Sequence record: NC_031126.1
Direction: 5' to 3' (one strand)
Length of the DNA: 64,000 bases
This document shows positions 24,762 through 64,000 of this stretch, piece by piece. The translations under genes were made by a program, and so were the position numbers. The notes under the pieces were generated by a model. That model was not told where the DNA came from and did not search any database. It worked only from the letters and a program-made list of their open reading frames with translations. Each line of letters starts with the position of its first letter. The first letter of the stretch is position 1.

Positions 24762-25241
24762 ATGCTGATTATCTCTGTCAGTATCGATAAGATATCCCCG
24801 GAGACCTATCCGGGATTACGCAGTTGGATTGAAGAATTAAATTCGATTCGTACTAACCCCGTGAACATTGTGATGGCGGTTGAAGACGATAACGTGATGG
24901 GGATAATGGTGTGGGAACCCGGCCATTTAATTTATCTGGTGGTACCTGAGGCTTCCCGCCACTGCGGCGCAGGAACCTATCTGGTTAACTACCTACTACA
25001 GCAGTCGGATAAGAAAACCGCCTGGTGTAAAGTGCTCCCATCTGCGGTCGATGCAATTTGTTTCTTTCATCGGATGGGCTGGCAAATCACGAGCTGGTAT
25101 ACCGATCACGCAGACCGCCGATACTTTCGTATGACGAATGCAGTTCCGCAAGCGTCAACGATTCCATCGGAGGAAAAGCAGTTAGAAACGTTTGCTTCCA
25201 GCGTGCCTATCTTCCTCTCGATGGCCGGAGGTATTTACTAG
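24762..25241 (+). CDS. GNAT-family acetyltransferase
   Basis: YLVVPEASRHCGAGTYLV (acetyl-CoA motif A) and DAICFFHRMGW. Confidence 0.8.
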   Translation: MLIISVSIDKISPETYPGLRSWIEELNSIRTNPVNIVMAVEDDNVMGIMVWEPGHLIYLVVPEASRHCGAGTYLVNYLLQQSDKKTAWCKVLPSAVDAICFFHRMGWQITSWYTDHADRRYFRMTNAVPQASTIPSEEKQLETFASSVPIFLSMAGGIY

Positions 25242-28653: not shown

Positions 28654-29121
28654 ATGGACGTAAAGCTCATTCTAAAAGCCGACTCCCGTCTCGGTAAACT
28701 CTACTACAGTAGTCTATTACAATTACACAACGAACTGTACGCTGACCAGCGTACCAAACTCAATGACCTGACAGGCCGTGATGGGTTTGGGGGTGCAGAT
28801 TCCTTAGATGGGATTTGGACGCCGTACGATGTGATGGCGGTCGCCTTAGATGAGAAGCAGGAAGCCGTGGGTTTCTTGTCGTTCTCTATCAGCGGGAAGA
28901 ACGCGCAAAAATGGTTATGGATTCACAACTTCTACGTCAAAGATTCTCAGCGCGGTAAAGGCGTTGGGTCGTTGCTGATGCAGACGGTGCGTGACTACGG
29001 CAAACAGAAAGGCTGTCGCTTTATGCAGTTGACTGTTCTCGATAACAACGAGGCTGCCCTGGCTATGTATCAGCGGTTGGGTTTCCGAACTGAAATGCAG
29101 GATATGGTTAAGGAGTTGTGA
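28654..29121 (+). CDS. GNAT-family acetyltransferase
   Basis: FYVKDSQRGKGVGSLLM (motif A) and DNNEAALAMYQRLGF. Confidence 0.9.
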   Translation: MDVKLILKADSRLGKLYYSSLLQLHNELYADQRTKLNDLTGRDGFGGADSLDGIWTPYDVMAVALDEKQEAVGFLSFSISGKNAQKWLWIHNFYVKDSQRGKGVGSLLMQTVRDYGKQKGCRFMQLTVLDNNEAALAMYQRLGFRTEMQDMVKEL

Positions 29122-34718: not shown

Positions 34719-34730
34719 TAAAACTAAATA

Positions 34731-34787
34731 AGGGGGCTTCGGCTCCCTTATATTTTTTGTCTTTTTACGTTTGTAATAGATCTTGTG
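34731..34787 (+). terminator. UUCG terminator followed by TTTACGT-N13-TGTG motif
   Basis: agggggc-ttcg-gctccct plus T tract; motif 34764-34787 upstream of the GNAT/Dam operon. Confidence 0.7.
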
Positions 34788-34813: not shown

Positions 34814-35761
34814 ATGTATAGCATTGCGCGAGTATTTTGGGGTAGCATTCATGCCCGCAAATTGCGCGAGTTGTTACAGCCGGGCACAGACTCAGCAAAC
34901 CGACTCGATGCATTTTTAAAGAACCCTTCCATCGCTGTCTACGGACTTACGATGAATGGGGAATGGGGCGGTTACTTTGCCACATCTAATGTGCCGGGTG
35001 ATGAAACCTTGGCCTGTCATCATTTCACGCAGTTGAAAGCACACGCTATTCGTCCTACAACGATTCAATTGCTGCTTGACCACACCGGGACTTCTAACCT
35101 CATGATGTTGGGTGAGGACGAGAAGAAAATCTCCCGTTTGGAGAACCTCGGTTTTATTCTGATTGAAAACAATTGGTCAGCTGAAACGAAACCGTATGCT
35201 GACTTAGAAGTTGATAAACGGGTTGTTGATATTTCCATCGGCTTGGCTGATGAAGTTATCAGTGAAGATGACCTGCATGAACTGAACGTGGTGTTGTCCT
35301 GTTCGATTCTGGAAGAAGGCGACTACGACCCATTAAAACGCTACATCCTGCATACTGTCCGTCCTGACCAAGTTATCGAACGGGGTCGCAGTGGGAAGTA
35401 TCGCACACTGATTTGGCGTGAAGAGGGCAAGATTCTGGGCGTAGTCCAACTCGAGTATACGAACTGGGGTGGCGTGTCGTTAACGGGCATGGGCGTTCAT
35501 CCGCATCACCAGAAGCGACGCATTGGTCGAAACCTTGTAGCGGCAGCTATGAAACTGGCCAGTCAGTCCCACGAAGAAATCAGCGCGACGACCTTTGCCG
35601 GTAATATCCCCGCTGAACACTTATTGGGTAATCTTTTACGTTACACCAAGCTGCCGGGTTCCTACGGTATCGGTAAAACCGAAGACGCGGTTTCCTGGAA
35701 ACGTACAAAGGGTCTCAACAAACACATCGACCGTGATCGCGGCCCGGTGTTAGCCGATTAA
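34814..35761 (+). CDS. tandem GNAT protein with intact C-terminal acetyltransferase domain
   Basis: C-domain GMGVHPHHQKRRIGRNLV (motif A) and GNIPAEHL; N-domain ends SRLENLGF. Confidence 0.75.
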   Translation: MYSIARVFWGSIHARKLRELLQPGTDSANRLDAFLKNPSIAVYGLTMNGEWGGYFATSNVPGDETLACHHFTQLKAHAIRPTTIQLLLDHTGTSNLMMLGEDEKKISRLENLGFILIENNWSAETKPYADLEVDKRVVDISIGLADEVISEDDLHELNVVLSCSILEEGDYDPLKRYILHTVRPDQVIERGRSGKYRTLIWREEGKILGVVQLEYTNWGGVSLTGMGVHPHHQKRRIGRNLVAAAMKLASQSHEEISATTFAGNIPAEHLLGNLLRYTKLPGSYGIGKTEDAVSWKRTKGLNKHIDRDRGPVLAD

Positions 35762-35770
35762 GAGGTTGGG

Positions 35771-36595
35771 ATGCAACGTGCAATTTTAAAATGGGTAGGT
35801 GGTAAGAGTCGTGTGCTACCTACCCTTAAAAAAATCCTACCTGAGGGCGATTGCCTGGTAGAACCGTTTGTTGGTAGTGGTTCGGTCTTCCTGAATACCG
35901 ATTATGCTCAGTATCGTTTGTCGGATTCTAATCCAGACTTGGTACTGGTGCTTAAAGTGGCCTCAGAAGCTCCTGATGACCTTATTGAAGCTTGCGAAGA
36001 GCTATGGGGTATGGGATTCGATGAAGACACCTACGCCACACTGAAGGCTAAATTCAATGACCGTAAAAACATCACTATCGAAGACAGCATCGATCGTGCT
36101 GCGTTGTTCATTTACCTTAACCGTCATGGCTATAATGGCCTGTGTCGCTATAATGGAAGTGGGGGTTATAATGTCCCACACGGTAAACCAGAGTCTGCAC
36201 CATATTTGCCGCGTGCTGAGATTCAAGCATTCTGGAAGAAGTGTTCCGAGTGTGAAGTGATTATTACGTGTCAGGACTTCACCGAAGCACTGACGAACTT
36301 ACCAAAAAATGCGGTGGTCTATTGTGACCCACCATACATTCCCCGCTCTAAAACAGCAGCTTTCGCACAGTACCACAAAAGCCCGTTCGGCCAACAACAG
36401 CATCGTGTTTTGGCCAGGCTGTTAAAAACCGCCCACAAAGACGGCGCTAAAGTTGTGCTGTCGAACTCGGATACGTTGTTGACTAAAGACATCTATTACG
36501 GGTTTGATTGGCAGACGGTTGTGGTAGGTCGTTACGTGGGGGCAAAAGCTGACAAGCGTGGGAAGGTTAACGAACTTATCGGGATTCTGAAATGA
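35771..36595 (+). CDS. dam: DNA adenine methyltransferase (Dam family)
   Basis: LKWVGGKSR, LVEPFVGSGSVFL, FIYLNRHGYNGLCRYN..G.YNVP.G, VVYCDPPY. Confidence 0.95.
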   Translation: MQRAILKWVGGKSRVLPTLKKILPEGDCLVEPFVGSGSVFLNTDYAQYRLSDSNPDLVLVLKVASEAPDDLIEACEELWGMGFDEDTYATLKAKFNDRKNITIEDSIDRAALFIYLNRHGYNGLCRYNGSGGYNVPHGKPESAPYLPRAEIQAFWKKCSECEVIITCQDFTEALTNLPKNAVVYCDPPYIPRSKTAAFAQYHKSPFGQQQHRVLARLLKTAHKDGAKVVLSNSDTLLTKDIYYGFDWQTVVVGRYVGAKADKRGKVNELIGILK

Positions 36596-37395
36596 AACTG
36601 GTTCAATACCAAATTGATAACGACCAGATGGCTGTGCAGTTTAACGGCAAGATGGCGCGTATTGATAAAGTCTGGAACGCCCTCTCGCAGTTTAGAGGTG
36701 GGTTGTGTGACCATACCGAGCACTACATGATCCTTTCGAATAGTGACCGGGTGCTGATGTACTTCAACGGCACGCGCAGTGGTCGTCATTTTTATATTCA
36801 AGGGCTCAGCCCACTGTCTGACCAAACATTCAAGCAGTGGAAAGCACTACAGCGTGAATTAGAGGTCAGTTATCTGGAACTGATTGCGGGTGCCGACGGT
36901 GGGAGCGTACGTTCGCAGTTTGAGGCGATGGGCTTGAAGTTTGTAACGAAGCGTGTTGTCTTCACTATCACTGACCCAGACGCGGTTACGTTCCCAACGT
37001 GTGGTATTCAACTGCAAGACAACAGTTCGCTTGAAGAGATTGCGGCCTTGTGTGAACTTGCCAAGAAAAAGTTGGCAGGTGCAGAGGACATTCTGTCTAG
37101 TGCAGCCGTGGGCGCGGTGAGTGTACAGATGCGGTTCACGGGTAACATCTTAACCAGCGCTATGTTCTACAGCGAAGTAGGTACTGAGATGTTAGTCAGC
37201 GAGGCTTTCGTGTCTGTGTACCCGACGGGGAGCACTGAATACGCAGAGGAGTTCATCGAACACTTCCGTGGGATGTTGGGTCGTTGTGCAACAGAGAATA
37301 AGCACTACTCTATTGCATTGGCGGCAGAAGCCAAGATTCCTGAATACGAAGGCATTGAACACGAGGTGCGGTCTCACCATTATACCTTCGCCTAG
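36592..37395 (+). CDS. degenerate tandem GNAT-like protein
   Basis: 267 aa; mid-protein RSQFEAMGLKFV resembles a GNAT terminal motif; no R/Q-x-x-G-x-G motif; ATGA overlap with dam. Confidence 0.45.
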   Translation: MKLVQYQIDNDQMAVQFNGKMARIDKVWNALSQFRGGLCDHTEHYMILSNSDRVLMYFNGTRSGRHFYIQGLSPLSDQTFKQWKALQRELEVSYLELIAGADGGSVRSQFEAMGLKFVTKRVVFTITDPDAVTFPTCGIQLQDNSSLEEIAALCELAKKKLAGAEDILSSAAVGAVSVQMRFTGNILTSAMFYSEVGTEMLVSEAFVSVYPTGSTEYAEEFIEHFRGMLGRCATENKHYSIALAAEAKIPEYEGIEHEVRSHHYTFA

Positions 37396-37403
37396 GAGGC
37401 TGA

Positions 37404-38204
37404 ATGCAACAATTACGCCTGGTAGAAGAAACCGAATATCTCTCTAGCCGTGAATGGCTTATGAGGCATCGGATTGAACAATTTCAGCAACAGATAATCC
37501 GCTACAATCACGACGATGAAGATGACCGTTTTCGTTTAGTGAGTGTATTCGTTGGGGAAGTAAGGGCAATGGCCTTACTGTTACTCGACCGTGGGTTTAT
37601 GGTGGAACTGATGGGACTCAATACTAATCCTGAGATACCCGTCCCGAGTGTCACCAAACTGTTGCTGCGACATCTGGAACGTTCGCGAATCATTGTCTAC
37701 GCTCGTGAATACGAAGACCAGTATGTTGAGATGGGGTTACCTGTAGTGTCTATTAACTACGCCCGGCCCATCATTCCAGGACGTCGCGATAATAAACATT
37801 TCACCGCAAATGTTGCTTCATTATATCACGACAAAGAACAGTTCCGCATTTACGTCCGCGCTACTCTCGGTGATGACCCTGCGGTTGAATCGGTACTCAA
37901 CTCAAATGGGATGTTTTCTTTACTGATTACCGGAGAGGGCGAACAGGTCGCGGCCATTGTTAGTCGTGGTGAGAAACGGTGGGTGATGTCTGATCCCCAG
38001 GTTCTTCGTGTGTCAGGAAATAAACCGGCAACCGACGCGGTCTTTGGCCGCTTTGTCGAGTGCTTGATGGCCTGTTTACCGAAAGGAGATACCCTCGTGT
38101 ATTCTTCGACGATACAGGCAGCTAACAACCGGGTAACGTGGCTGATTATGAACAGCTTCGTCCCTGAAAGCTATTTGCACCATCGTGCCCTAAAGGAGAA
38201 TTGA
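37404..38204 (+). CDS. degenerate tandem GNAT-like protein
   Basis: 266 aa; QYVEMGLPV mid-protein and ANNRVTWLIMNSF at the end; no acetyl-CoA motif. Confidence 0.45.
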   Translation: MQQLRLVEETEYLSSREWLMRHRIEQFQQQIIRYNHDDEDDRFRLVSVFVGEVRAMALLLLDRGFMVELMGLNTNPEIPVPSVTKLLLRHLERSRIIVYAREYEDQYVEMGLPVVSINYARPIIPGRRDNKHFTANVASLYHDKEQFRIYVRATLGDDPAVESVLNSNGMFSLLITGEGEQVAAIVSRGEKRWVMSDPQVLRVSGNKPATDAVFGRFVECLMACLPKGDTLVYSSTIQAANNRVTWLIMNSFVPESYLHHRALKEN

Positions 38205-38962
38205 TGAGAGAGATTACCGAAGAGGTTGTTAATGCGACCTATCCTAAACCGCTTGGTCGTGGCTTATTGAAATGGCGTATTGATGACCTGGATGCGGAAC
38301 GCGCCGAAACTAAGCATATCGTAGAACTCGATAATGGCTCTATTGCTTATGTCCGCAAAATAGAAAACAGTGCGCTCGTGACCGATCTTGACCTGCTCTA
38401 CGGCTTGGAAGGGATTACGCTGGTAGGATTGCCTGAATGTTTGGGTGTCGAACATGTGTTCATGTACACCAGTAATCCAAACGATGCCATGCCCATCACT
38501 TTAGGGTTAGAGCTGCGTACCCAACGGATGCGTAAAGAAGGGGGTAATCCTATCGAATGCCCACCTGGATTCGACGTGGATGTTGTGCTCACGGAAAAAG
38601 AAATGACCGCTCTGCTGGAAATCGCTGACATCAGCCCAGGGATGCGCGTCGCCATCGGTGATATCGGGCGAGGTGATTCTTTCCTCTGTCGTCTGACCAG
38701 CACGCTCGGCGATGGGATTATGATAGTCGACCGTATGGAAGACGGCGGCATCGCCATGAATAGTTATAATGTTCAGGGTAGTCAAGACGCCATACGTTTG
38801 ATGGACGGTTTCGATTACCTGGTTTCGCAGTCCACGTACGGTTATTACAACTACGTACAGAACAATACGACTGAAGAACTACTGGCTGAATACATGGCCA
38901 ACAAAGGCTACAAAACCGTTAGTTCCGTTTATGCAATTTCCGCTACCCCTAAAGGAGAATAA
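38201..38962 (+). CDS. degenerate tandem GNAT-like protein
   Basis: 253 aa; PITLGLEL mid-protein and NNTTEELLAEYMANKGYK at the end; overlaps previous stop. Confidence 0.45.
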   Translation: MMREITEEVVNATYPKPLGRGLLKWRIDDLDAERAETKHIVELDNGSIAYVRKIENSALVTDLDLLYGLEGITLVGLPECLGVEHVFMYTSNPNDAMPITLGLELRTQRMRKEGGNPIECPPGFDVDVVLTEKEMTALLEIADISPGMRVAIGDIGRGDSFLCRLTSTLGDGIMIVDRMEDGGIAMNSYNVQGSQDAIRLMDGFDYLVSQSTYGYYNYVQNNTTEELLAEYMANKGYKTVSSVYAISATPKGE

Positions 38963-38963
38963 C

Positions 38964-39236
38964 ATGTCAATCAATCGTTCCGTATCTCGCTCTAAAGAAG
39001 TTGTGTACACTGTTGAAACCGGCGATGACATGGAGAAGTTCCATGGCGTGATTGATGAAGAGCATAAGCTCCTTATCGCGTATCCCGGTAAAGAAATGAC
39101 AAACCGTCGCCATGTTAATCTACTCGATAAACTCTTGGCTAAAGCCGCACATCGCGACGGCATTAAAGGCAGCCAGGTTCTTTATGGCAAAGTGCTGAAC
39201 CAGGAAGGCAAAGAGTTGGTTATCCATAACGCCTAA
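38964..39236 (+). CDS. small hypothetical protein
   Basis: Start re-assigned to ATG 38964 after aaaggag. Confidence 0.7.
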   Translation: MSINRSVSRSKEVVYTVETGDDMEKFHGVIDEEHKLLIAYPGKEMTNRRHVNLLDKLLAKAAHRDGIKGSQVLYGKVLNQEGKELVIHNA

Positions 39237-39278: not shown

Positions 39279-39767
39279 ATGGAAGTTATTGACTTCGAGC
39301 AGTTGCCTCAACATGACTTCGACCTTGACGTTCGTAGCGAAGAAAATGCTGATGCTAATTTGCTAATGAAGCGTTATTACTCGCTAATAACGGGTAGCGA
39401 AAGAGACGAGGTTAGCCTTGGCGATTTCGAGAAGGTGCTGGTCGGTCTGATTGAGACAAACGCTGCCCATGTGGCGTTGCTTAATGAGCTGAACTTCACC
39501 GGGGTTGAACCATCTGATGCGGCTATGATTCTGCGCGACAGTATCGTGCCAAGCGATGAGATTCTCGATAAGGTCGCGGCACTGCGCGGGCCGTTCGATG
39601 AAGCAGTGGAAGATTACGTAGAGCAACTCAAAGAGGCGAATCTGACTCTGTGTGCTCCGGTTGACCCTAATCCTACAGTAGAGCAGGAAGAGGAAGCCCG
39701 TAGTCGTCTTGCACGTTATGTCATTACCAGTGTACTGGTTGACGACCGTGAAGAAACCCAGCTCTAA
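39279..39767 (+). CDS. strongly acidic helical protein
   Basis: 162 aa; about 37 D/E versus about 13 K/R by hand count. Confidence 0.75.
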   Translation: MEVIDFEQLPQHDFDLDVRSEENADANLLMKRYYSLITGSERDEVSLGDFEKVLVGLIETNAAHVALLNELNFTGVEPSDAAMILRDSIVPSDEILDKVAALRGPFDEAVEDYVEQLKEANLTLCAPVDPNPTVEQEEEARSRLARYVITSVLVDDREETQL

Positions 39768-39772
39768 GAATA

Positions 39773-39805
39773 AGCCTATCCTTCGGGGTAGGCTTTCTTT
39801 TTTTA
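39773..39805 (+). terminator. intrinsic terminator (UUCG loop)
   Basis: agcctatcc-ttcg-gggtaggct followed by T tract. Confidence 0.8.
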
Positions 39806-55325: not shown

Positions 55326-56120
55326 ATGTCTTTTCAATCTAAACAGAATCTGCTAAAACTCATCAACAAAGAAAATGCCATCACTCCGGTGTTGACGTTT
55401 GACGATGTTGATATCTCTCTGCCGGAGGTGGTTTCAGTCGACGGTCGTGATTCAAAGGTAACACTTACCTCGAAAATCAAGGGCGACGAAGGATCGCAAA
55501 TTGACGTGACATACCACCGTCGCGATTTGCCTGACTATGTCAAAGACGATCTGTCGTTTGATGCAATCGGTGTGGTTTCTACCCACGATTATATTCCCGC
55601 GCTCAACGATCGTTTCAATCTGAACCTGCTTCCGGAAGACCTGGAAGACGCCCCGGTCTCGGGTGATTCGCATACGGTTGTCGCCGTACCGACTTCACAC
55701 GAATGGCGCGGGAACGTCACATTACAAATCATACAAGCGGTGCCATTAGCGTCTATCGTCCCGTTGACCGAATTAGATGGTCTGAAGTATCCCGACCACC
55801 AAATTACAGCCGTTGGTCAAGCATCCACGTACTCGTACGATTTGGATGCTACCAAACTGGCAAGTTGGATTCCTCAACTCCGTGCTGGTACTGCTGACAT
55901 GACAGCCTTTGCGAAGGACTTGTCTACCGTAGTACCAGAGTTGTGGGTCAATAAACTCGATGTAGCACCGTACAACTTACAGCAGGCGTCCTTTGCGTTC
56001 TACGGTTCACCGTCGACCATCCCAGGGACTAATCCTGAATTCGCCAATGTGCTCGGTTTAAACCTGAGTGTATTGTGTAGTAACTTCCAGGGTACCTTGC
56101 TGCTCCACTTTAACAACTAG
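55326..56120 (+). CDS. tail/baseplate fibre paralog 1 (phiKZ gp131-135-like family)
   Basis: Start ATG 55326; K..LL..IN..N module, LDGL.YP, GQASTYSY, C-terminal CSNFQG.LLLHFN. Confidence 0.7.
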   Translation: MSFQSKQNLLKLINKENAITPVLTFDDVDISLPEVVSVDGRDSKVTLTSKIKGDEGSQIDVTYHRRDLPDYVKDDLSFDAIGVVSTHDYIPALNDRFNLNLLPEDLEDAPVSGDSHTVVAVPTSHEWRGNVTLQIIQAVPLASIVPLTELDGLKYPDHQITAVGQASTYSYDLDATKLASWIPQLRAGTADMTAFAKDLSTVVPELWVNKLDVAPYNLQQASFAFYGSPSTIPGTNPEFANVLGLNLSVLCSNFQGTLLLHFNN

Positions 56121-56129
56121 GAGGGCTGA

Positions 56130-56972
56130 GTGTCTATCTACAATAAACCCTCACGCGAAATGTTGTTGGATGCCATTAACAAGCAGAATAACTTGTTGGC
56201 GAATCCATTAACGTGGAACCAAATCGCCTCAGGTTATCCTGAGACGGTATCGACTCCTGGTGCTGACCGTAATACCCGCGTATTGTTGTACGGGCTGAAC
56301 GGGATGGGTTACAAAGGCAACGTAAACATCGAATACGACCGTATTCTGATGCCTGTGTTGTTCCGTAACGTCATCCCGGTGGTTATCACCAACCCGGTGA
56401 ATAAGCTCTCTGAGCTGCTACCGTTTCTCAACAAGAAGTACGGCCTCTCGCTGATTGCTGAAGACGTTGAAGATTTCTCCGTTGCATCGATGGGGGAAAG
56501 TTGGATTGCGGACGTAGTTATTAAGCCGGGTTGTCTGGCTTGGCAGGGCACCTTTAAGTTACGCTACGCGAAGTTCTTCCCGAACCTAGCTGACGTAGTA
56601 ACTGATGTTGACTTGTCTGCGATTATCCCGCCGTTCACAATGGGGGCTAAACCGCAAGCTGAGTACGTCACCTACGGCTACGACTGGACGGAGATGAAAA
56701 AGCAGTTCACCGAGGACTGGTTGTTTGGACGTTCCATCACCGCCGCCGATGTCGAACTCCTTAACGGTGTCGTGCCGTTGAAGTTTGTCTACGCTACCGG
56801 TGACGTAGCGCAACCGGGACAGATTGCTTTGCAAGGGGCGCGTTTCCAAGGTGTCGCATCGGTTACCCCAGGTGACCAGTACGACCCGCTGTATTCGCGT
56901 GTGGCGGCCATCCGATTAGCGGCGAACAGCAACTATACCGGCGACCTCATCCTTCACTATCAGCCGATATAG
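56130..56972 (+). CDS. tail/baseplate fibre paralog 2
   Basis: Same N-module (YNK.SREMLLDAIN, NTRV, GYKG...YDR); YG.DWT; C-terminal G.L.LHY. Confidence 0.7.
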   Translation: MSIYNKPSREMLLDAINKQNNLLANPLTWNQIASGYPETVSTPGADRNTRVLLYGLNGMGYKGNVNIEYDRILMPVLFRNVIPVVITNPVNKLSELLPFLNKKYGLSLIAEDVEDFSVASMGESWIADVVIKPGCLAWQGTFKLRYAKFFPNLADVVTDVDLSAIIPPFTMGAKPQAEYVTYGYDWTEMKKQFTEDWLFGRSITAADVELLNGVVPLKFVYATGDVAQPGQIALQGARFQGVASVTPGDQYDPLYSRVAAIRLAANSNYTGDLILHYQPI

Positions 56973-56980
56973 GGATTACC

Positions 56981-57826
56981 ATGCCACTCTTAGCCACAGC
57001 AGAACAAATCATCCTAAAAGAAGTCAACACGGAAAACCACCTCGACTTAAAAGTCACTGACGTGGTCTTCGGGGAGCCTGCGATTCCAACCGAACCAGAG
57101 GACGTTACTAAGGCTAACGGCCATAACTCCATGGTACGAATCCAGGCATTGGCTACCGCAAATGCGATCGGGGCAACCAAGGTCTATTACGACCGTGTCG
57201 ATTTTGCAGAAATGTTCACAGATATCGACGGCATTCAGCCGCTGCGCATCCCTGCCCGTTTAGATACGGTGTACCATGCTCACGATATCGTGAATCTAAT
57301 TAACCAGTATTACGGACTGAGTCTACGGGTCTCGGATGTGGAAAACACCGAGATTGACCGCAAGACCTGGGTTGTTGATCTTGTTGCAACACCAACCTCT
57401 CTCGGGTGGATTGGCCAACAACAAGTACAGCTCCTGCCGGGTGACGCCCTACTGCCGAATAACTTCGACCCAGTAGAAGTCACACCGTATGCGTATCCGT
57501 ACTTCAACACGAAAGTCGGTCAGGGTGCGGTATATTCGTATCCATGGCGTTTTGACAATTATGCGGCGGAGTTTAAGTCAGCGGGCCTCGGTCTTACGAC
57601 TGACCGCTTGGCAGCCATCTTGAAAACGGTTACAGGCGACGGTTGGTCAGTGTACCGAAACCCGATTAACTATAACGTCAAAGAGGCGATTGTGGTTTAT
57701 AACGGGGTGAACAAAGCTGAGTTCCCAACCAACCCATCCGTGGACAATGTCGTGATTGTTGAACTGTCGCTCTATTGTCTCAACCTTGGTGGTCGTTTGT
57801 ACCTGCATTACAACGACCCTGATTAA
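56981..57826 (+). CDS. tail/baseplate fibre paralog 3
   Basis: N-module, GQGAVYSYP, C-terminal CLNLGGRLYLHYN. Confidence 0.7.
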   Translation: MPLLATAEQIILKEVNTENHLDLKVTDVVFGEPAIPTEPEDVTKANGHNSMVRIQALATANAIGATKVYYDRVDFAEMFTDIDGIQPLRIPARLDTVYHAHDIVNLINQYYGLSLRVSDVENTEIDRKTWVVDLVATPTSLGWIGQQQVQLLPGDALLPNNFDPVEVTPYAYPYFNTKVGQGAVYSYPWRFDNYAAEFKSAGLGLTTDRLAAILKTVTGDGWSVYRNPINYNVKEAIVVYNGVNKAEFPTNPSVDNVVIVELSLYCLNLGGRLYLHYNDPD

Positions 57827-57847
57827 TCCTGAGTAAAGGAAGTTAGA

Positions 57848-58759
57848 ATGAAACCTTTAAACAAAACGTCCGATCTGCTGGTTCTTGACCTCATCAATGA
57901 AAAGAACCCAGGTGCTGACCTCGAGCTGGGTAAAGTTAAACTGGGTGACCCAACGCCAGTAGCTGGCGATGACCCTGAACGCAACACTTCTATGGTGCTG
58001 ACAGCGCGTAAGAACTCCGGTTACATTGGTGACCAGACTGTAACTTACGATCGCCTAGACGGCGTAGCGCTGTTCCGTAACGTGACTGCGTATCTGGACG
58101 TTAAGTCTCCGAAGAAAACCGAAGACTTGTTGGCGACGCTGAACACTCAGTATGGTCTGAAACTGACAGAAGAAGATATTGTCTCTGCCGCCATCCCGGA
58201 CGGTACTAACCCACCGTTGTCTGACCCAGATGCTCCAGACCCGGTTCCTGTTGACCACACCATCACCTTCGATGCGGGCTGCTACGCTTACCTGGGTACT
58301 ATCCCAGTTAAAATCGGGCCTAAACCACAAGTCGGTGAGCGCCTGAGCCTGGTGGTTACTGAAACCAAACTGGACGGCCTGGTGTATCCAGACGGCCCAA
58401 GCGATACCAAAGGTCAGGGTTACATCTACTCCTACGGCGTAGACTGCACCGCAATTGCCGACTTCCTGAAAGTTCAGGCTGACGGTATCATTGCAGAAGA
58501 CTCTGCATTCCCGGTTGAACTGAACAAAGTGGTTCCGGAACTGTGGGTTGACAGCGAAACCGCTGCCGACTACAACCTGCACGGTGCAAACGTCCTGTAC
58601 GTTGGCCTGACCGCAGATGACGGTACTGCAACTGGCGATGAGCCAAAGAAACCAGTGGAAGGCGCTAACACCGCGTACAACCAGGTTCTGAAACTGCAAC
58701 TGTCTGATACCCTGTGCACCAACTTCCAGGGCGTCATGTTCCTGCACTTCAATGCCTAA
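57848..58759 (+). CDS. tail/baseplate fibre paralog 4
   Basis: N-module, LDGLVYPD, GQGYIYSY, ELWV, C-terminal CTNFQGVMFLHFN. Confidence 0.7.
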   Translation: MKPLNKTSDLLVLDLINEKNPGADLELGKVKLGDPTPVAGDDPERNTSMVLTARKNSGYIGDQTVTYDRLDGVALFRNVTAYLDVKSPKKTEDLLATLNTQYGLKLTEEDIVSAAIPDGTNPPLSDPDAPDPVPVDHTITFDAGCYAYLGTIPVKIGPKPQVGERLSLVVTETKLDGLVYPDGPSDTKGQGYIYSYGVDCTAIADFLKVQADGIIAEDSAFPVELNKVVPELWVDSETAADYNLHGANVLYVGLTADDGTATGDEPKKPVEGANTAYNQVLKLQLSDTLCTNFQGVMFLHFNA

Positions 58760-58773
58760 TTAAGGCCGCGCTG

Positions 58774-58816
58774 GGAGGAGGGATTCCTCCTCCTGGCACA
58801 CTCCTTTCTTTTTTTA
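58774..58816 (+). terminator. hairpin within fibre array
   Basis: ggaggagg-gatt-cctcctcc with T run about 12 nt downstream. Confidence 0.5.
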
Positions 58817-58832
58817 GGCCGAGGAGGCTATT

Positions 58833-59672
58833 ATGGCTTTATATAGTCTGTCTCAGCGACAATTCCTGTACGATGCGATTAACGCCGAAAACCCTGGGGC
58901 GATTATGCCCATGGAGTTGGAGAATGCCAACATTGGTATTCCCCGTGCGATTGCTGTTACAGCGAGCGGTGCCAATACGGAGATTACCATTCGTGGTCGT
59001 CAAGGTCGCGGCTATGTGGGCGCACAGACGTTCCGCTATAAACGCTTGTCGCTGAACGACTTGTTTAAGAACATGACACCACAGGTAACGGCACCGAATG
59101 CGTATGGATGGCTGAACGTTGTCTCTAAGCGTACCGCGTTTGCCCAGAACCTGAATGGCCGTTATGGTCTAAACCTGGTCGCGGACGATATCCCGGAAAA
59201 CTACATTTACTTAAACGTGCTCAACACGTTGCGTGTGAATGCTTCCTGTATTCAGTACACCGGGACCATCACCTTTATGTCTATCCGGGGCAAGAACAGC
59301 CTGGAAGAGTTGGTGTTAAACGACATCCTACCGGAATTGAAACATCCAATTGAGCCATCGAAAGGTAAGCGTTCATTGGGGATGTTGCTGTACGGGGAAG
59401 ACTTCACGGACGAAGTGCAAGTCATGGCTGCATTTAAGAACGGGCGTCTGGACGTCGGGAGTAACTTCGACAACGGCTACACCGATAACTTAATGGCAAC
59501 GTTAATCGCGCGTGGGCTGCCTGCATTTGATCCGACTAGCGCAACGATTACTCGCATGAAAGCGAGCGATTACCAGTTTGCGAATAAGATGTTCGATAAC
59601 GTGTTGGTCATCACCAATGTGATTAACGACCCGGACGTCAGCGGCGACTGCATGTTGCACTACAACAATTAG
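58833..59672 (+). CDS. tail/baseplate fibre paralog 5
   Basis: N-module, LPEL.HP, YGEDFT, C-terminal G..MLHYN. Confidence 0.7.
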   Translation: MALYSLSQRQFLYDAINAENPGAIMPMELENANIGIPRAIAVTASGANTEITIRGRQGRGYVGAQTFRYKRLSLNDLFKNMTPQVTAPNAYGWLNVVSKRTAFAQNLNGRYGLNLVADDIPENYIYLNVLNTLRVNASCIQYTGTITFMSIRGKNSLEELVLNDILPELKHPIEPSKGKRSLGMLLYGEDFTDEVQVMAAFKNGRLDVGSNFDNGYTDNLMATLIARGLPAFDPTSATITRMKASDYQFANKMFDNVLVITNVINDPDVSGDCMLHYNN

Positions 59673-59684
59673 GAATAAGAGCGA

Positions 59685-60572
59685 ATGGCTATCTATCTAG
59701 CTTCTAAAGACGTCCTTCTGTCGGCGGTGAACCAGGCGAACTCATTAGCTATTAAGGCAACTGATATCGTTTGGTCTACGCCAAAGGACATTCGTGGTAC
59801 TGATAAAGGTACAACGACTGGGAAGAACACCCAGATTAAAATCACGGCAGACGGGGTGGTCGGTTCTACCTGGTCTAGTAAAAAGAATCTGTACTACGAC
59901 CGACTGAAAGTGGAAGACCTAGTTATCCTGCTGGGCGATACGCTGGCTATCGGTCCGTCTAACGATACTCTGTACGAAGCGATTCCGGGTTTGAACCAAC
60001 GCTACGGTTTTGTGTTTGAAGAAGCTGACCTGGTCGATGCAGAAATCGTCTGGGACACCGATCGTCTAACGGGTACTGTCAAGGTAGCCGCTAACACTAA
60101 CTGCGTGGGTTGGATTGGTCAACAGGTATTCAAAGTTGTACGTGGTGACGAATCTCTGGTATCGGTTGTAACCACCAACATTCTGACTGGTCTAAAATAC
60201 CCGAACGGGCAGATGGGCTCCGAAGCCGTCAATGGTATCATTGCGCAGGTGTACTCGTATCCGTTCAACTTCACCAAGTACCGTGACCAGATGCTGGCCT
60301 ATACGCCAGGCATTCTGTCCGGCCAATCGTTGACCGATATGACCAACCAGCTGAAAGATATCACGGGTAATGCGTGGGTATCTACCACCGCAGCAGCGTG
60401 GGGTCTGGCGGGAGCAGAAGTTATCAGTGTAGGGCCTAACGACCCAGTGGCGTTGCCGACCTCTGCGAAGTACAAGTACGTGCTGGTACTCAAACTGCCT
60501 GCAACTACAACCAACATTGTAGGTACCATGTACCTCCAGTTCAACGACCCGGAAGATCCGGACGAGGTGTAA
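59685..60572 (+). CDS. tail/baseplate fibre paralog 6
   Basis: N-module, LTGLKYP, AQVYSYP, C-terminal G.MYLQFN. Confidence 0.7.
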   Translation: MAIYLASKDVLLSAVNQANSLAIKATDIVWSTPKDIRGTDKGTTTGKNTQIKITADGVVGSTWSSKKNLYYDRLKVEDLVILLGDTLAIGPSNDTLYEAIPGLNQRYGFVFEEADLVDAEIVWDTDRLTGTVKVAANTNCVGWIGQQVFKVVRGDESLVSVVTTNILTGLKYPNGQMGSEAVNGIIAQVYSYPFNFTKYRDQMLAYTPGILSGQSLTDMTNQLKDITGNAWVSTTAAAWGLAGAEVISVGPNDPVALPTSAKYKYVLVLKLPATTTNIVGTMYLQFNDPEDPDEV

Positions 60573-60575
60573 TCG

Positions 60576-61403
60576 ATGCTCAATTATGCTAAGCCGTCGA
60601 GCGAGCTGGTCTTTGACCTCATTAACCGAGATAACCCAACGTTACCGGTTAAGTTGACGCCGTCTAACTGCTTCATCGAGAAGATTACAAATGTCCCGGT
60701 GAATGCTGCGTCTAATCAACGCAATACGCAGGCTCGTCTGCGCGGGGTGCAAGGTTCCGGTGTTCGCGATTCAATTACGGTGTACTACGACCGTGTAAGC
60801 CTGGCGCGTTTGCTGCCGTGGGGTACAGGTGTACCTTCCCAGTTCGTGACTTATGATGCAGCTAACACCCATGCGGCGTTAGCGGTGTTGTTGGAAACCT
60901 ACGGTGTCAACTTCTCACAGATTGATATCGTCAACGCGAACATGCCTGGTGCCAACAGCCCTAACTACACCAACACAGTTGGTATCACTGCGTTGGGTAC
61001 ATCCCCAGCGTACGTGAGTGCCGCAACGTTGCGTTACAGTCGTGGACTGCCGGTACTGGATACCTCGATTAAGCAAGACACACTTCCCGAACTTCAGCAT
61101 CCGGTTGATCCGACTCTGAATAAGAAATGTGTGGATTTGCTGACGTACGGTATCGACTTTACTGCGTACAAAAACCTGTTAGTGGTAGATGCTTCTGGCC
61201 TACCGCAATGGGCGGGGTTACGCAAAGTGCTGGATGACCTGGGTGTGCCTGCCTATTCGGGCCCGCTGAACAGTAACACCGTGCAAGATGTCCCAACCGC
61301 TACCGCTGGAATGGCTAACAAAGCATACGACCGCGTAGTTATTCAAACGGGTATTGACGAAACCGGTGCGAAGGGTCGTGCTTATTACCACTACAACAGT
61401 TAA
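60576..61403 (+). CDS. tail/baseplate fibre paralog 7
   Basis: N-module, LPELQHP, YGIDFT, C-terminal G.AYYHYN. Confidence 0.7.
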   Translation: MLNYAKPSSELVFDLINRDNPTLPVKLTPSNCFIEKITNVPVNAASNQRNTQARLRGVQGSGVRDSITVYYDRVSLARLLPWGTGVPSQFVTYDAANTHAALAVLLETYGVNFSQIDIVNANMPGANSPNYTNTVGITALGTSPAYVSAATLRYSRGLPVLDTSIKQDTLPELQHPVDPTLNKKCVDLLTYGIDFTAYKNLLVVDASGLPQWAGLRKVLDDLGVPAYSGPLNSNTVQDVPTATAGMANKAYDRVVIQTGIDETGAKGRAYYHYNS

Positions 61404-61406
61404 CGT

Positions 61407-61433
61407 AAGGCCCTCCGGGGCCTTTTTCTTTTT
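61407..61433 (+). terminator. intrinsic terminator
   Basis: aaggccc-tccg-gggcctt followed by T tract. Confidence 0.7.
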
Positions 61434-61451
61434 GTAGTGTCGGGAGCCAAT

Positions 61452-62870
61452 ATGCAATTCTATTCCAAAGCGGCGCTGGAATTGGTCTACGACCAGGTGA
61501 ATCGAGATAACCCTCATTTGCCGGTAACGTTGACACCGGCAAACGCAGCCCTCACCAGTGGGCCTTCTGCTGTTTCTTCAAACGGCCGAAATACCAGAGC
61601 AGTCTTTACCGGGTATCCTGGGAGCGGAGTACAAGGGAATGTGACCCTGTACTACGATCGCGTGAACCTGGACGCCTTATTTAATTTTGTCCCGGCTGTT
61701 TTCCTGCCCGATGATGTCTTGACCTATCGTGCTGCGCTGCCGTTTATAAACGAAGCCTTGGGGTTATCTTTACTGCCCGCTGACATTACCACGCCGGATG
61801 CAGCATTGAAAAAATCCAGTGGCGTGGCGCAGAGCGGTAAGCTGACCATCGTGTCGGGATGTCCAGCCTTTACTGGCAATCTGAATTTTACCTACATGCT
61901 TGAGGGCGCGGGGTACTATCCAGATTCAGGACCTGGCCCTAAGCAGTTGCTACAAGGCGATACGATCATGGGTTACTTTGGTCGCGTCGCTTCCTCGGAT
62001 TTGTTTACGCATGCCGAACTTGTCACGATGCTGTTAACCGGCACCGGGGCGAAGTTAGTCAGTGGAACCGAGGGCTGGTATAAGTTCTTTTATCAGGGCA
62101 CTATCATTTATCTACCGGTCACGCCGGTGGCAAACACCATCAGTTGGAGTCTGCTTTACGGGGCAGGTATCGTTTATGGTGTTGATGGGGTCGGGACCTA
62201 TCCGATGTCGCCTGCGGTTAATCAAGGCAAAATCTTAACAAAAGATACAGCCAGTGACGGGCGTATTTATCTTCGACCAAAACTACCCACCGCCAGCAAG
62301 AATGACCCTATGACAACAGCCACTGGGACACTTCCAATAGCGGACACTGCTGGTAGCGTTCTTGATTTGATGTTGAAGGTTCGTGATGGTACCTGGGAAA
62401 GCAACTCGTACAGCGATTGGTCGCAATGGGTGCAGATGCGCAATAGCGTGCAGGGGCAGACGCAGAACAACAAACTGATTACGATGTTGGGGCAAAGCGC
62501 TACTAACGTCAACAAAACTACAGCGGGCGCGGGGTATTACTGGTGGCCTGTCTTAGAGTTAGTTGACAAAAATGGCACCACTTTAGGATTGGAAGAGCTT
62601 CGGGGTAACGTTGATCGTACTCTGACACCTATCACCTTTACGCCACAACTGACGCTACAAATTGCGCCGATTGCGATGACTAACGCAAAGACCGTTGAGT
62701 ATTCACCGATACTCTTTGGTACCGAAAACAGTCTAGCGATATCACCGACTGCGTTTGCGTTACCGAAAACGGTTGACTTCACGCCAATCACCTTCTCCGC
62801 AGAAATCTATACCCCACCTGCTAAACCATCGTTATCGACAATGAATGGTGAATTAGACGGGTTCAAATAG
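61452..62870 (+). CDS. fibre paralog 8: N-module fused to a second virion domain family
   Basis: Start ATG 61452; N-terminus like 60576; central YFGRV...WYKF...SWSLLYGAGIVYG shared with 62882. Confidence 0.7.
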   Translation: MQFYSKAALELVYDQVNRDNPHLPVTLTPANAALTSGPSAVSSNGRNTRAVFTGYPGSGVQGNVTLYYDRVNLDALFNFVPAVFLPDDVLTYRAALPFINEALGLSLLPADITTPDAALKKSSGVAQSGKLTIVSGCPAFTGNLNFTYMLEGAGYYPDSGPGPKQLLQGDTIMGYFGRVASSDLFTHAELVTMLLTGTGAKLVSGTEGWYKFFYQGTIIYLPVTPVANTISWSLLYGAGIVYGVDGVGTYPMSPAVNQGKILTKDTASDGRIYLRPKLPTASKNDPMTTATGTLPIADTAGSVLDLMLKVRDGTWESNSYSDWSQWVQMRNSVQGQTQNNKLITMLGQSATNVNKTTAGAGYYWWPVLELVDKNGTTLGLEELRGNVDRTLTPITFTPQLTLQIAPIAMTNAKTVEYSPILFGTENSLAISPTAFALPKTVDFTPITFSAEIYTPPAKPSLSTMNGELDGFK

Positions 62871-62881
62871 AGGTATTCATC

Positions 62882-63877: not shown

Positions 63878-63886
63878 GGAGCGGTC

Positions 63887-64000
63887 ATGACCATTCGTTT
63901 AAGTTGGCCGACGCAGGTTGACAAAGCATTAACAGGCATTGAGATTTATCGGAAAACGGGGTGGGATGCAACGATTGATGTATACAATCCAGGCGTCCCA
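63887..64000 (+). CDS. virion structural protein, 3'-truncated paralog of 62882
   Basis: taaggag RBS; MTIRLSWPTQVDKALTGIEIYRK mirrors MSFTLRWKNP...VNIYRD. Confidence 0.65.
   Translation, partial: MTIRLSWPTQVDKALTGIEIYRKTGWDATIDVYNPGVP

What the first reader, a model, noticed from the sequence alone, without database searches (positions are those of the whole stretch)
34814..38962. Dam methylase embedded in an operon of four tandem-GNAT paralogs, only one with an intact acetyl-CoA motif
Seen: five tightly coupled ORFs (gaps of 8-9 nt or 4-nt overlaps) behind one terminator and promoter motif: a 315-aa double GNAT, Dam, then three 253-267 aa proteins. Each of the three appears to have two GNAT-like halves (x-x-(L/M)G(F/L) near the middle, and an N...(G/S)(F/Y) motif at the end in 37404 and 38201) but lacks R/Q-x-x-G-x-G. 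Known: GNAT folds include phage Mu Mom (adenine modification), the anti-CRISPR acetyltransferase AcrVA5, aminoglycoside acetyltransferases and CoA-independent aminoacyl-tRNA transferases (FemABX type). Inference: this could be a multi-subunit acyl-transfer complex (one catalytic subunit plus pseudo-enzyme specificity subunits), a GNAT-Dam DNA hypermodification system, or a host-protein acetylation counter-defence module. I do not recall such a system being described.
Basis: partly seen in the sequence, partly recalled or inferred. Interest (0 to 1): 0.72.

Follow-up and report, generated by a model that had tools for sequence, protein, structure and literature searches.

The report
Degenerate tandem-GNAT gene array with inserted Dam
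A jumbo Erwinia phage carries a row of four related two-domain acetyltransferase-fold genes, only the first of which keeps its acetyl-CoA site. An ordinary E. coli-type Dam methylase gene appears to have been inserted into this row rather than to work with it.

Summary
The window is Erwinia phage vB_EamM_ChrisDB (Machinavirus, Chimalliviridae).

**Observation: holds.** gp120 to gp124 are tightly coupled ORFs behind a terminator and a recurrent intergenic motif.
- gp120 has a Pfam GNAT C-domain with a variant CoA loop (RRIGRN).
- gp121 is an E. coli-type Dam.
- AlphaFold models of gp122 (pLDDT 92) and gp123 (pLDDT 83) hit almost only tandem-GNAT structures (VipF, Orf14, MshD, FemX). Both lack the Q/R-x-x-G-x-G/A loop.
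- gp124 was not folded. It is linked only by profile matches that lie above an empirical noise floor.

**Interpretation: partly holds.**
- The module GNAT–Dam–X1–X2–small protein is conserved in Seoulvirus, Machinavirus, Wellingtonvirus and metagenomic relatives.
- Erskinevirus lacks the gp120 homolog but keeps Dam–X1–X2.
- Derbicusvirus has three tandem-GNAT paralogs plus the small protein at the same site. It has no Dam anywhere in its genome.

The GNAT array is therefore probably ancestral and Dam a later insertion. This weakens both the GNAT–Dam hypermodification reading and the obligate-complex reading.

All five genes are under purifying selection (dN/dS 0.03–0.20), and the GNAT-like genes diverge faster than Dam. 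The likeliest role is a diversifying host-interaction family. This is a new variant of a known kind, of moderate interest.

The parts
34728..34751 (+). Intrinsic-terminator-like hairpin that closes the upstream unit (after gp119)
   Evidence: 10-bp stem, 5 GC pairs, T-run; sequence read
34762..34770 (+). TTTTTACGT, a recurrent intergenic motif and candidate promoter element, 44 nt before the gp120 ATG
   Evidence: 6 exact copies in the window, all + strand and intergenic, against 0.84 expected; contexts read
34814..35761 (+). gp120, 315 aa. Two-domain GNAT: the C-domain is a bona fide GNAT (aa 192-270) with CoA loop RRIGRN at aa 235-240 (nt 35516-35533). The N-domain is inferred to be a degenerate GNAT.
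   Evidence: 129 PDB GNAT hits, all through the C-domain; N-domain
35771..36595 (+). gp121, Dam-family N6-adenine DNA methyltransferase (E. coli type), with FxGxG and DPPY motifs present
   Evidence: TIGR00571, 247 bits against a cutoff of 115; E. coli Dam 2g1p, E 1e-61; T4 Dam only 1e-7; sequence
36592..37395 (+). gp122 (X1, family A), 267 aa. Tandem-GNAT fold with no CoA loop. It follows Dam directly in every Dam-bearing relative examined.
   Evidence: AF2 pLDDT 92, pTM 0.82; Foldseek against PDB: VipF 9e-10, MAB_4324, Orf14, MshD, FemX
37404..38204 (+). gp123 (family B), 266 aa. Tandem-GNAT fold with no CoA loop. It is the X2-type protein of Seoulvirus and Erskinevirus.
   Evidence: AF2 pLDDT 83, pTM 0.59; Foldseek against PDB: Orf14 1e-6, VipF 1e-5; BFVD
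38204..38962 (+). gp124 (family C), 252 aa, acidic (pI 4.5). Inferred tandem-GNAT paralog. It is the X2-type protein of Machina, Wellingtonvirus and distant relatives, and the fastest-evolving member.
   Evidence: hhalign A-C E 6.7e-5 over 144 columns and B-C 7e-4, against a noise floor of 2e-3; not folded
38964..39236 (+). gp125 (S), 90 aa. A small basic protein that follows the last tandem-GNAT gene in every relative, Dam-less Derbicusvirus included.
   Evidence: no Pfam or PDB match
39279..39767 (+). gp126, 162 aa, last gene before the terminator. Same transcription unit, but not linked to the array in Derbicusvirus, where its homolog lies about 8 kb away.
39772..39795 (+). Intrinsic-terminator-like hairpin that closes the unit

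Best explanation
**What it is.** The locus is an old array of tandem-GNAT paralogs that sits after the thymidylate-kinase/HTH genes in the SPN3US-like and Derbicusvirus branch of Chimalliviridae. It is always followed by a small conserved protein, gp125.

**The members.**
- gp120 keeps a working-looking acetyl-CoA site in its C-terminal domain. It is probably an active N-acetyltransferase of unknown substrate.
- gp122, gp123 and gp124 keep the two-domain GNAT scaffold but have lost the CoA pyrophosphate loop in both domains.
- They are maintained by purifying selection yet diverge and change in copy number faster than their neighbours.
- They therefore most likely act as CoA-independent binding or adaptor proteins (pseudo-acetyltransferases) in phage-host interaction, not as acetyl-CoA enzymes.

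**Dam.** An E. coli-type Dam gene was inserted between the first and second paralog in the ancestor of Seoulvirus, Machinavirus, Erskinevirus and Wellingtonvirus. It is co-transcribed with the array and probably does ordinary GATC methylation of phage DNA.

**Status of each step.**
- Shown: the folds of gp122 and gp123, the motif loss, the paralogy signal, the synteny, the Dam-less relative and the selection values.
- Inferred: the fold of gp124, the direction of the Dam event, the catalytic inactivity and the host-interaction role.
For: **Fold**
- gp122: AF2 pLDDT 92. Foldseek against PDB gives 225 hits at E<=1e-3, and the top 50 are all tandem-GNAT, Fem or MprF folds.
- gp123: pLDDT 83. The top 35 PDB hits are all GNATs, and the best-ranked are tandem GNATs.

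**Motif**
- [RQ]xxGx[GASN] is conserved only in the gp120 family.
- The A-G profile alignment places STEYAEEF of gp122 where gp120 has QKRRIGRN.

**Paralogy**
- In an all-against-all hhalign of 17 syntenic families (136 pairs), A-G (2.5e-5, 174 columns), A-C (6.7e-5) and B-C (7e-4) rank 2 to 4. The best unrelated pair scores 2.3e-3.
- The top 8 of 28 half-domain pairs are all N-to-N or C-to-C.
- The gp123 model's best non-self BFVD hits are 314-317-aa phage GNATs at TM 0.5.

**Evolution**
- Derbicusvirus gp102, gp103 and gp104 are BLASTP-visible paralogs at the same site. The first two have canonical loops and the third has none.
- The Derbicusvirus genome has no Dam.
- Dam-X1 adjacency holds in every other context examined.
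- The nearest non-jumbo Dams are in temperate enterobacterial phages, at 42-47% identity.

**Selection**
- dN/dS is 0.03-0.20.
- ChrisDB against SPN3US identity is 29-31% for the GNAT-like genes and 55-56% for Dam, gp125 and gp126.
Against: - gp124 and the N-domain of gp120 were never modelled.
- The profile links have modest probabilities (26-75%).
- Loss of the sequence motif does not prove loss of CoA binding or of catalysis.
- Family B keeps many invariant polar residues (E11, D62, E68, N118, Y119, R192, Y257, R261), which would suit an enzyme.
- Dam is tightly or translationally coupled to X1 in four genera and in all metagenomic relatives examined. That could reflect a functional tie acquired after the insertion.
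- The direction of the event (Dam gained, rather than lost in Derbicusvirus) rests on parsimony and on Dam's affinities, not on a rooted tree.
- No expression, localisation or interaction data were found for any homolog.
Confidence: 0.6

Rival explanations
1. Heteromeric acetyltransferase. gp120 is the catalytic subunit, and gp122-124 are pseudo-enzyme subunits that give it substrate specificity.
For: - All the genes sit in one operon with tight coupling.
- They are paralogs, and only gp120 keeps the CoA loop.
- The number of X genes varies from 1 to 3 between relatives.
Against: - Erskinevirus (phiEaH2, Asesino, Stratton) keeps Dam-X1-X2-S. None of these phages appears among the 55 phage records with a gp120 match at E<=1e-3.
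- In SEGD1 the gp120 homolog is split and unannotated.
- Other single-domain GNATs in these genomes (gp102, gp109) could stand in for gp120, so the model is not excluded.
Confidence: 0.15
2. DNA adenine hypermodification module. Dam, or Dam-marked GATC sites, and the GNAT-fold proteins cooperate to put an acyl-type group on adenine, in the manner of Mu Mom.
For: - Dam sits directly before X1, often with overlapping stop and start codons, in Seoulvirus, Machinavirus, Erskinevirus, Wellingtonvirus and five metagenomic contexts.
- Published comparative work predicts GNAT-fold DNA-base acylases in other jumbo phages (PMC7824862).
Against: - Derbicusvirus has the array plus gp125 and no Dam in 223,935 bp.
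- No Mom-family or other DNA-modification family was returned by Pfam, NCBIfam, PHROGs, PADLOC, PDB or BFVD searches.
- The X proteins lack an acyl-CoA loop.
- The Dam is a plain E. coli-type enzyme.
- GATC is already about 4-fold depleted with or without Dam.
Confidence: 0.1
3. gp122-124 are CoA-independent aminoacyl-tRNA-dependent transferases of the FemABX, MprF or Sba18 kind. They would add amino acids to a peptide, lipid or small-molecule acceptor.
For: - They have a tandem-GNAT fold with no CoA loop.
- Foldseek hits for gp122 include FemX (1e-6), Sba18/Sbb17 (2e-6 to 3e-6) and L-PGS/A-PGS (3e-6).
- For gp123, Sba18 scores 1.5e-3 and a phage FemAB protein scores 8e-3.
Against: - These hits rank below the acetyl-CoA tandem GNATs.
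- There is no Pfam FemAB or DUF2156 match.
- The proteins are shorter than Fem proteins.
- The 64-kb window holds no tRNA gene.
Confidence: 0.1
4. The downstream genes are decaying duplicates with no function of their own.
For: - They have lost the catalytic signature.
- They diverge fast, and copy number varies.
Against: - dN/dS is 0.06-0.20.
- Reading frames are intact in every relative examined.
- Family A is conserved from 20% to 88% identity with a confident common fold.
Confidence: 0.03

Closest known systems
Tandem-GNAT acetyltransferases with one degenerate domain: mycothiol synthase MshD (1ozp, 2c27), Legionella VipF (6wqb, 7wx5), clavulanate Orf14 (2wpw), MAB_4324 (7q3a)
   Same: - They have two GNAT domains in one chain of 270-340 aa.
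- They are the best Foldseek matches of both models.
- gp120 matches the pattern of a degenerate N-domain plus an active C-domain. The C-domain of VipF aligns with the C-domain of gp120.
   Different: - gp122-124 have no CoA pyrophosphate loop in either domain, whereas these enzymes keep at least one.
- There is no detectable sequence similarity.
- Global TM-scores are only 0.3-0.5, which reflects a different packing of the two domains.
- Here four such genes stand in a row.
FemABX, MprF and Sba18 aminoacyl-tRNA-dependent transferases
   Same: They share the tandem-GNAT scaffold, work without acetyl-CoA and lack the Q/R-x-x-G-x-G/A loop. Foldseek E-values are about 1e-6 for gp122.
   Different: - They rank lower than the acetyltransferases.
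- No family-level sequence match was found.
- The phage proteins are shorter.
- No link to tRNA was seen.
Single-domain phage GNATs with known roles (phiKMV Rac, AcrVA5) and Mu Mom
   Same: They are phage-encoded GNAT-fold proteins used against host functions, or to modify DNA adenine in the case of Mom.
   Different: - None came back as a hit in any search here.
- They are single-domain and retain a cofactor site.
- Mom is not adjacent to a phage dam gene (from my own knowledge of Mu).
Orphan Dam methyltransferases of E. coli and of temperate enterobacterial phages
   Same: - gp121 matches E. coli Dam at E 1e-61 over its full length.
- It scores above the TIGR00571 cutoff.
- It is 42-47% identical to the Dams of P2-like and other temperate phages.
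   Different: Here the gene is embedded in a GNAT array in a nucleus-forming jumbo phage whose genome is itself about 4-fold depleted in GATC.

Membership tests
GNAT superfamily (fold) | Mixed alpha/beta topology b1-a1-a2-b2-b3-b4-a3-b5-a4-b6 | tested here: met
   - gp122 and gp123: the DSSP strings of confident AF2 models show two such units each, and the Foldseek top hits are GNATs.
- gp120 C-domain: Pfam PF00583, E 2e-10.
- gp124: profile links only, so inconclusive for that protein.
GNAT superfamily (acetyl-CoA-using enzymes) | Q/R-x-x-G-x-G/A pyrophosphate-binding loop between b4 and a3 | tested here: not met
   - The loop is absent and not conserved in families A, B and C in both domains.
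- It is present only in the gp120 family: RRIGRN in ChrisDB, and RKRGIG or QRKGIG in relatives.
GNAT superfamily (acetyl-CoA-using enzymes) | Binds acetyl-CoA and transfers the acyl group | not testable with these tools
   This needs ligand-bound structures or biochemistry.
Tandem-GNAT proteins (MshD, VipF, Orf14 type) | Two GNAT domains in one polypeptide, at least one of them catalytically competent | tested here: inconclusive
   - Two domains: met for gp122 and gp123 and inferred for gp120 and gp124.
- A competent domain by motif: only in gp120.
FemABX / aminoacyl-tRNA transferases | Family-level sequence membership (Pfam FemAB, DUF2156) | tested here: not met
   - There is no Pfam or NCBIfam hit.
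- Only the fold is similar.
Dam family DNA-(adenine-N6)-methyltransferase | D12-class domain with FxGxG and DPPY motifs, scoring above the family cutoff | tested here: met
   - PF02086, E 1e-52.
- TIGR00571, 246.7 bits against a cutoff of 114.85.
- The motifs FVGSG and DPPY are read in the translation.
- E. coli Dam 2g1p, E 1e-61.
Dam family DNA-(adenine-N6)-methyltransferase | GATC specificity | not testable with these tools
   Inferred from the closeness to E. coli Dam and DpnM.
Mom-like DNA adenine acyl-modification system | A Mom-family GNAT, and dependence on or linkage to adenine methylation | tested here: not met
   - No Mom-like hit was returned by any library.
- The array exists without any Dam in Derbicusvirus.

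The most novel reading that the evidence does not exclude
gp122-124 together with the small protein gp125 form a CoA-independent acyl- or aminoacyl-transfer, or ligand-sequestering, machine. It is peculiar to nucleus-forming enterobacterial jumbo phages. After Dam was captured, the module became coupled to GATC methylation, for example by marking or reading phage DNA inside the phage nucleus.
Probability: 0.1. Interest if true: 0.8.

Novelty: new variant of a known kind. Interest (0 to 1): 0.45.

Why it matters
- **Annotation.** It gives a fold and an evolutionary history to three 'hypothetical' protein families, plus a fourth small one. These are conserved in SPN3US-like jumbo phages, which include phages studied for control of fire blight and Salmonella.
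- **Pseudo-enzymes.** An acetyltransferase gene family has expanded and shed its cofactor site while staying under selection. This is typical of arms-race genes.
- **A caution on gene neighbourhood.** The tight Dam linkage looks like the start of a hypermodification system but is best read as an insertion.
- **An open question.** It is unclear why a nucleus-forming phage with a GATC-poor genome captured a GATC methylase.

Tried and rejected
**Searches that found nothing**
- Pairwise BLASTP among the five proteins found nothing.
- Narrow-family hhalign was uninformative.
- phmmer and profile searches of families A, B and C against PDB sequences found no GNAT.
- NCBIfam and PADLOC returned nothing for gp122-124 or gp119.
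- The word-indexed homolog searches found only close relatives, 5 to 9 clusters each.
- The exhaustive profile search for family A found only 11 representatives among 1.84 billion, so the family is narrow.
- The profile of the small protein gp125 found nothing meaningful in PDB.
- No tRNA gene lies in the window.
- Literature searches found no description of the module, and no mention of SPN3US gp104-107 in the virion and essential-gene study.

**Leads dropped**
- gp119 (family U) showed no link to the GNAT families.
- gp126 was dropped from the module because it is unlinked in Derbicusvirus.
- A longer promoter pattern (TTTTACGT-N6-TAGAT) was not enriched. The 9-mer TTTTTACGT is enriched.

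**Limits set by the tools**
- With two structure jobs and three fold searches, gp124, gp120 and gp125 could not be modelled.
- BFVD accessions could be matched to genes only by length, identity and accession block. Their assignment to families A, C and G is probable, not proven.

Full report
**Identity and layout**

The window is bases 62001-126000 of Erwinia phage vB_EamM_ChrisDB (KX397366.1, 244,840 bp), at 100% identity. The finding covers gp120 to gp124. The ORFs and their spacing are as described:
- gp120: 34814-35761.
- gp121: 35771-36595, after a 9-nt gap.
- gp122: 36592-37395, with a 4-nt overlap.
- gp123: 37404-38204, after an 8-nt gap.

A terminator-like hairpin at 34728-34751 precedes the block. 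Eleven bases after it lies TTTTTACGT (34762-34770). This 9-mer occurs six times in the window, always on the coding strand and always in an intergenic region 40-110 nt before a start codon, against 0.84 expected. The next terminator-like hairpin is at 39772-39795. The unit therefore probably also contains gp125 (38964-39236, 1-nt gap) and gp126 (39279-39767).

**The two annotated genes**

*gp120.* It has a Pfam GNAT domain at residues 192-270 (E 2e-10). A profile of its family hits 129 PDB GNATs, all through positions 185-280. Its CoA loop reads R-R-I-G-R-N in ChrisDB and RKRGIG or QRKGIG in relatives. The N-terminal half has no sequence-level GNAT signal.

*gp121.* It is a Dam-family enzyme:
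- PF02086, E 1e-52.
- TIGR00571, 247 bits against a cutoff of 115.
- FVGSG and DPPY motifs present.
- E. coli Dam, E 1e-61; DpnM, 1e-36; T4 Dam, only 1e-7.

**The three unknown proteins**

None has a Pfam, NCBIfam, PADLOC or PDB sequence match. Each has its own PHROG of unknown function.

Each family is narrow. The word-indexed search found 5 to 9 clusters per family. An exhaustive profile search for the gp122 family found 11 representatives in 1.84 billion.

I collected relatives from phage records and metagenomic contigs and modelled two proteins.
- **gp122**, with a 24-sequence alignment, gave pLDDT 92 and pTM 0.82. Foldseek found 225 PDB hits at E<=1e-3. The top 50 are all tandem-GNAT folds: VipF 9e-10, MAB_4324 4e-9, Orf14 6e-9, MshD 4e-8, FemX 1e-6, Sba18 and MprF about 2-3e-6.
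- **gp123**, with 14 sequences, gave pLDDT 83 and pTM 0.59. Its top 35 PDB hits are all GNATs, led by tandem-GNAT proteins (Orf14 1e-6, VipF 1e-5).

Both DSSP strings show two b1-a1-a2-b2-b3-b4-a3-b5-a4-b6-like units. Global TM-scores are only 0.3-0.5, so the domain packing differs from the solved proteins.

Its fold is inferred from the evidence below.

**Paralogy**

Pairwise BLASTP sees nothing. As a control, I clustered all ORFs of 16 related loci into 17 families and ran all 136 profile-profile comparisons.
- Rank 1 is a trivial fragment pair.
- Ranks 2 to 4 are gp122-gp120 (E 2.5e-5, probability 75%, 174 collinear columns), gp122-gp124 (6.7e-5, 64%, 144 columns) and gp124-gp123 (7e-4).
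- The best clearly unrelated pair (Tmk-Dam) scores 2.3e-3.

Splitting each family into halves, the eight best of 28 pairs are all N-half with N-half or C-half with C-half across families. By my count this would happen by chance about 1.6e-4 of the time. It argues for duplication of a whole two-domain gene.

The gp122-gp120 alignment puts the gp122 C-domain on the gp120 GNAT domain, with STEYAEEF opposite QKRRIGRN. So the loop is lost at the equivalent position. The gp123 model's best non-self matches in BFVD are 314-317-aa phage GNATs (TM 0.5, about 295 columns). Further down the list are entries whose length and accession block fit X1 proteins and gp124. Those identifications are probable only.

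**Distribution**

| Lineage | Gene order at the site |
|---|---|
| SPN3US and other Seoulvirus | Tmk – HTH – … – GNAT – Dam – X1 – X2 – small protein |
| Machina group | same order |
| Wellingtonvirus | same order |
| Distant metagenomic relatives | same order |
| ChrisDB subgroup | same order, but both family B and family C follow X1 |
| Erskinevirus | no gp120 gene at the site; Dam – X1 – X2 – small protein kept |
| Contig L017 | X2 missing |
| Derbicusvirus | Tmk – gp102 – gp103 – gp104 – gp105; no Dam |

- X2 is of the gp123 type in Seoulvirus and Erskinevirus. It is of the gp124 type in the Machina group, Wellingtonvirus and the distant relatives.
- No Erskinevirus record appears among all 55 phage records that match gp120.

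Derbicusvirus (Phobos, EarlPhillipIV) is collinear with ChrisDB across the region. Its array has these features:
- gp102 and gp103 are full-length gp120-family members (hhalign 1e-18 and 9e-16). Both have Pfam GNAT C-domains and canonical loops.
- gp104 has neither, but is BLASTP-related to gp102 (1.8e-6) and gp103 (1e-3).
- gp105 is the gp125 homolog (1e-17).
- The complete EarlPhillipIV genome has no Dam. The best tblastn E is 0.15, and no methyltransferase is annotated.

The jumbo-phage Dams form a tight group at 53-65% identity. Their nearest relatives are the Dams of temperate enterobacterial phages at 42-47%.

**Reading**

The simplest history has four steps.
1. An ancestral three-gene tandem-GNAT array plus the small protein.
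2. Insertion of an E. coli-type dam between member 1 and member 2 in the SPN3US-like lineage.
3. Loss of the CoA loop in the downstream members. The third Derbicusvirus gene already shows this loss.
4. Later losses (gp120 in Erskinevirus, X2 in one lineage) and a gain (both X2 types in the ChrisDB subgroup).

All five genes are under purifying selection: dN/dS is 0.03 for Dam, 0.05-0.09 for gp120, 0.06 for gp122, 0.12-0.15 for gp123 and 0.20 for gp124. The GNAT-like genes nevertheless diverge faster. Identity to SPN3US is 29-31% for them, against 55-56% for Dam, gp125 and gp126. gp124 is only 49% identical between ChrisDB and Caitlin, where its neighbours are 72-86%.

Maintained, fast-evolving genes of variable copy number in an accessory region suggest host-interaction proteins. 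I take gp120 to be an active acetyltransferase. I take gp122-124 to be CoA-independent binders or adaptors built on the GNAT scaffold. This functional step is inference.

**Rivals**

- *Obligate gp120-X complex.* This is weakened by Erskinevirus.
- *GNAT-Dam hypermodification system.* This is weakened by Dam-less Derbicusvirus, by the plain Dam and by the absence of any Mom-like hit. The invariable Dam-X1 adjacency elsewhere keeps it alive at low probability.
- *Fem-like aminoacyl-tRNA chemistry.* The fold and the motif loss are compatible with it, but nothing else supports it.
- *Pure decay.* This is excluded by selection.

**Comparison and novelty**

Tandem GNATs with one dead domain are well known (MshD, VipF, Orf14). 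CoA-free tandem GNATs are also known (Fem, MprF). I found no description of a phage array of such paralogs, or of these families, in the searchable literature. A comparative survey of jumbo phages mentions GNATs and Dams only separately (PMC7824862). I file the finding as a new variant of a known kind.

**Limits**

- gp124, the gp120 N-domain and gp125 are unmodelled.
- No coordinates were available for mapping conserved residues.
- BFVD identities are inferred.
- The direction of the Dam event is not rooted.
- No expression or interaction data exist for any homolog.

Noticed in passing
whole window; also L002-L004, L015, L018 and EarlPhillipIV (L025-L029): GATC is the most depleted palindromic tetramer in the window (85 observed against 295 expected, ratio 0.29). 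The ratio is 0.15-0.36 in all relatives, including Dam-less EarlPhillipIV at 0.21 over its whole genome. GATC avoidance therefore predates Dam and does not depend on it.
   Followed up: partly
window 11132, 24100, 31150, 32932, 34762, 41026 (+ strand): TTTTTACGT occurs six times, against 0.84 expected. Every copy is on the coding strand and intergenic, mostly just after a terminator T-run and 40-110 nt before a start codon. It is a candidate phage promoter element.
   Followed up: partly
window 38964-39236 (gp125): A 90-aa basic protein follows the last tandem-GNAT gene in every relative, Derbicusvirus gp105 included. Its invariant residues are I3, R5, Y15, K60, R64, D65 and G66. It has no match in Pfam or PDB. 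It is more conserved than the GNAT-like genes.
   Followed up: partly
window 38204-38962 (gp124): This is the fastest-evolving gene of the unit: 49% identity between ChrisDB and Caitlin, where the neighbours are 72-86%. It is also strongly acidic (pI 4.5, net charge -17).
   Followed up: partly
Enterobacteria phage SEGD1, KU726251.1 (H306): The gp120 homolog matches in two separate places in the record and has no annotated CDS, so it appears to be interrupted once. I did not examine the nature of the break.
   Followed up: no
window 55326-64000 (gp155-gp164): A run of ten adjacent genes of about 265-470 aa is annotated as virion structural proteins. A matching run is present in EarlPhillipIV (gp136-gp150). 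It looks like another paralog array.
   Followed up: no
window 24762-25241 (gp102) and 28654-29121 (gp109): Two further single-domain GNAT acetyltransferases lie upstream. Both are conserved at syntenic sites in Derbicusvirus (gp85, gp97). gp109 has the canonical loop QRGKGVG.
   Followed up: no
BFVD hits of the gp123 model (ranks 8, 10, 11): A family of 213-214-aa proteins from these Erwinia phages (one from Huxley) matches the tandem-GNAT model at E 2e-5 to 1e-4. I could not tell which gene this is. It is not in the finding's operon.
   Followed up: no
protein clusters: Many members of the SPN3US-type X1, X2 and GNAT clusters are deposited as Salmonella enterica or E. coli proteins on contigs of about 240 kb. 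So whole jumbo-phage genomes sit in bacterial assemblies, through carrier state or contamination.
   Followed up: no
NC_042018.1 (Erwinia phage RisingSun), 150615-151397: Another Chimalliviridae Erwinia phage has a Dam only 36% identical, at a different locus and on the other strand. This suggests an independent acquisition.
   Followed up: no
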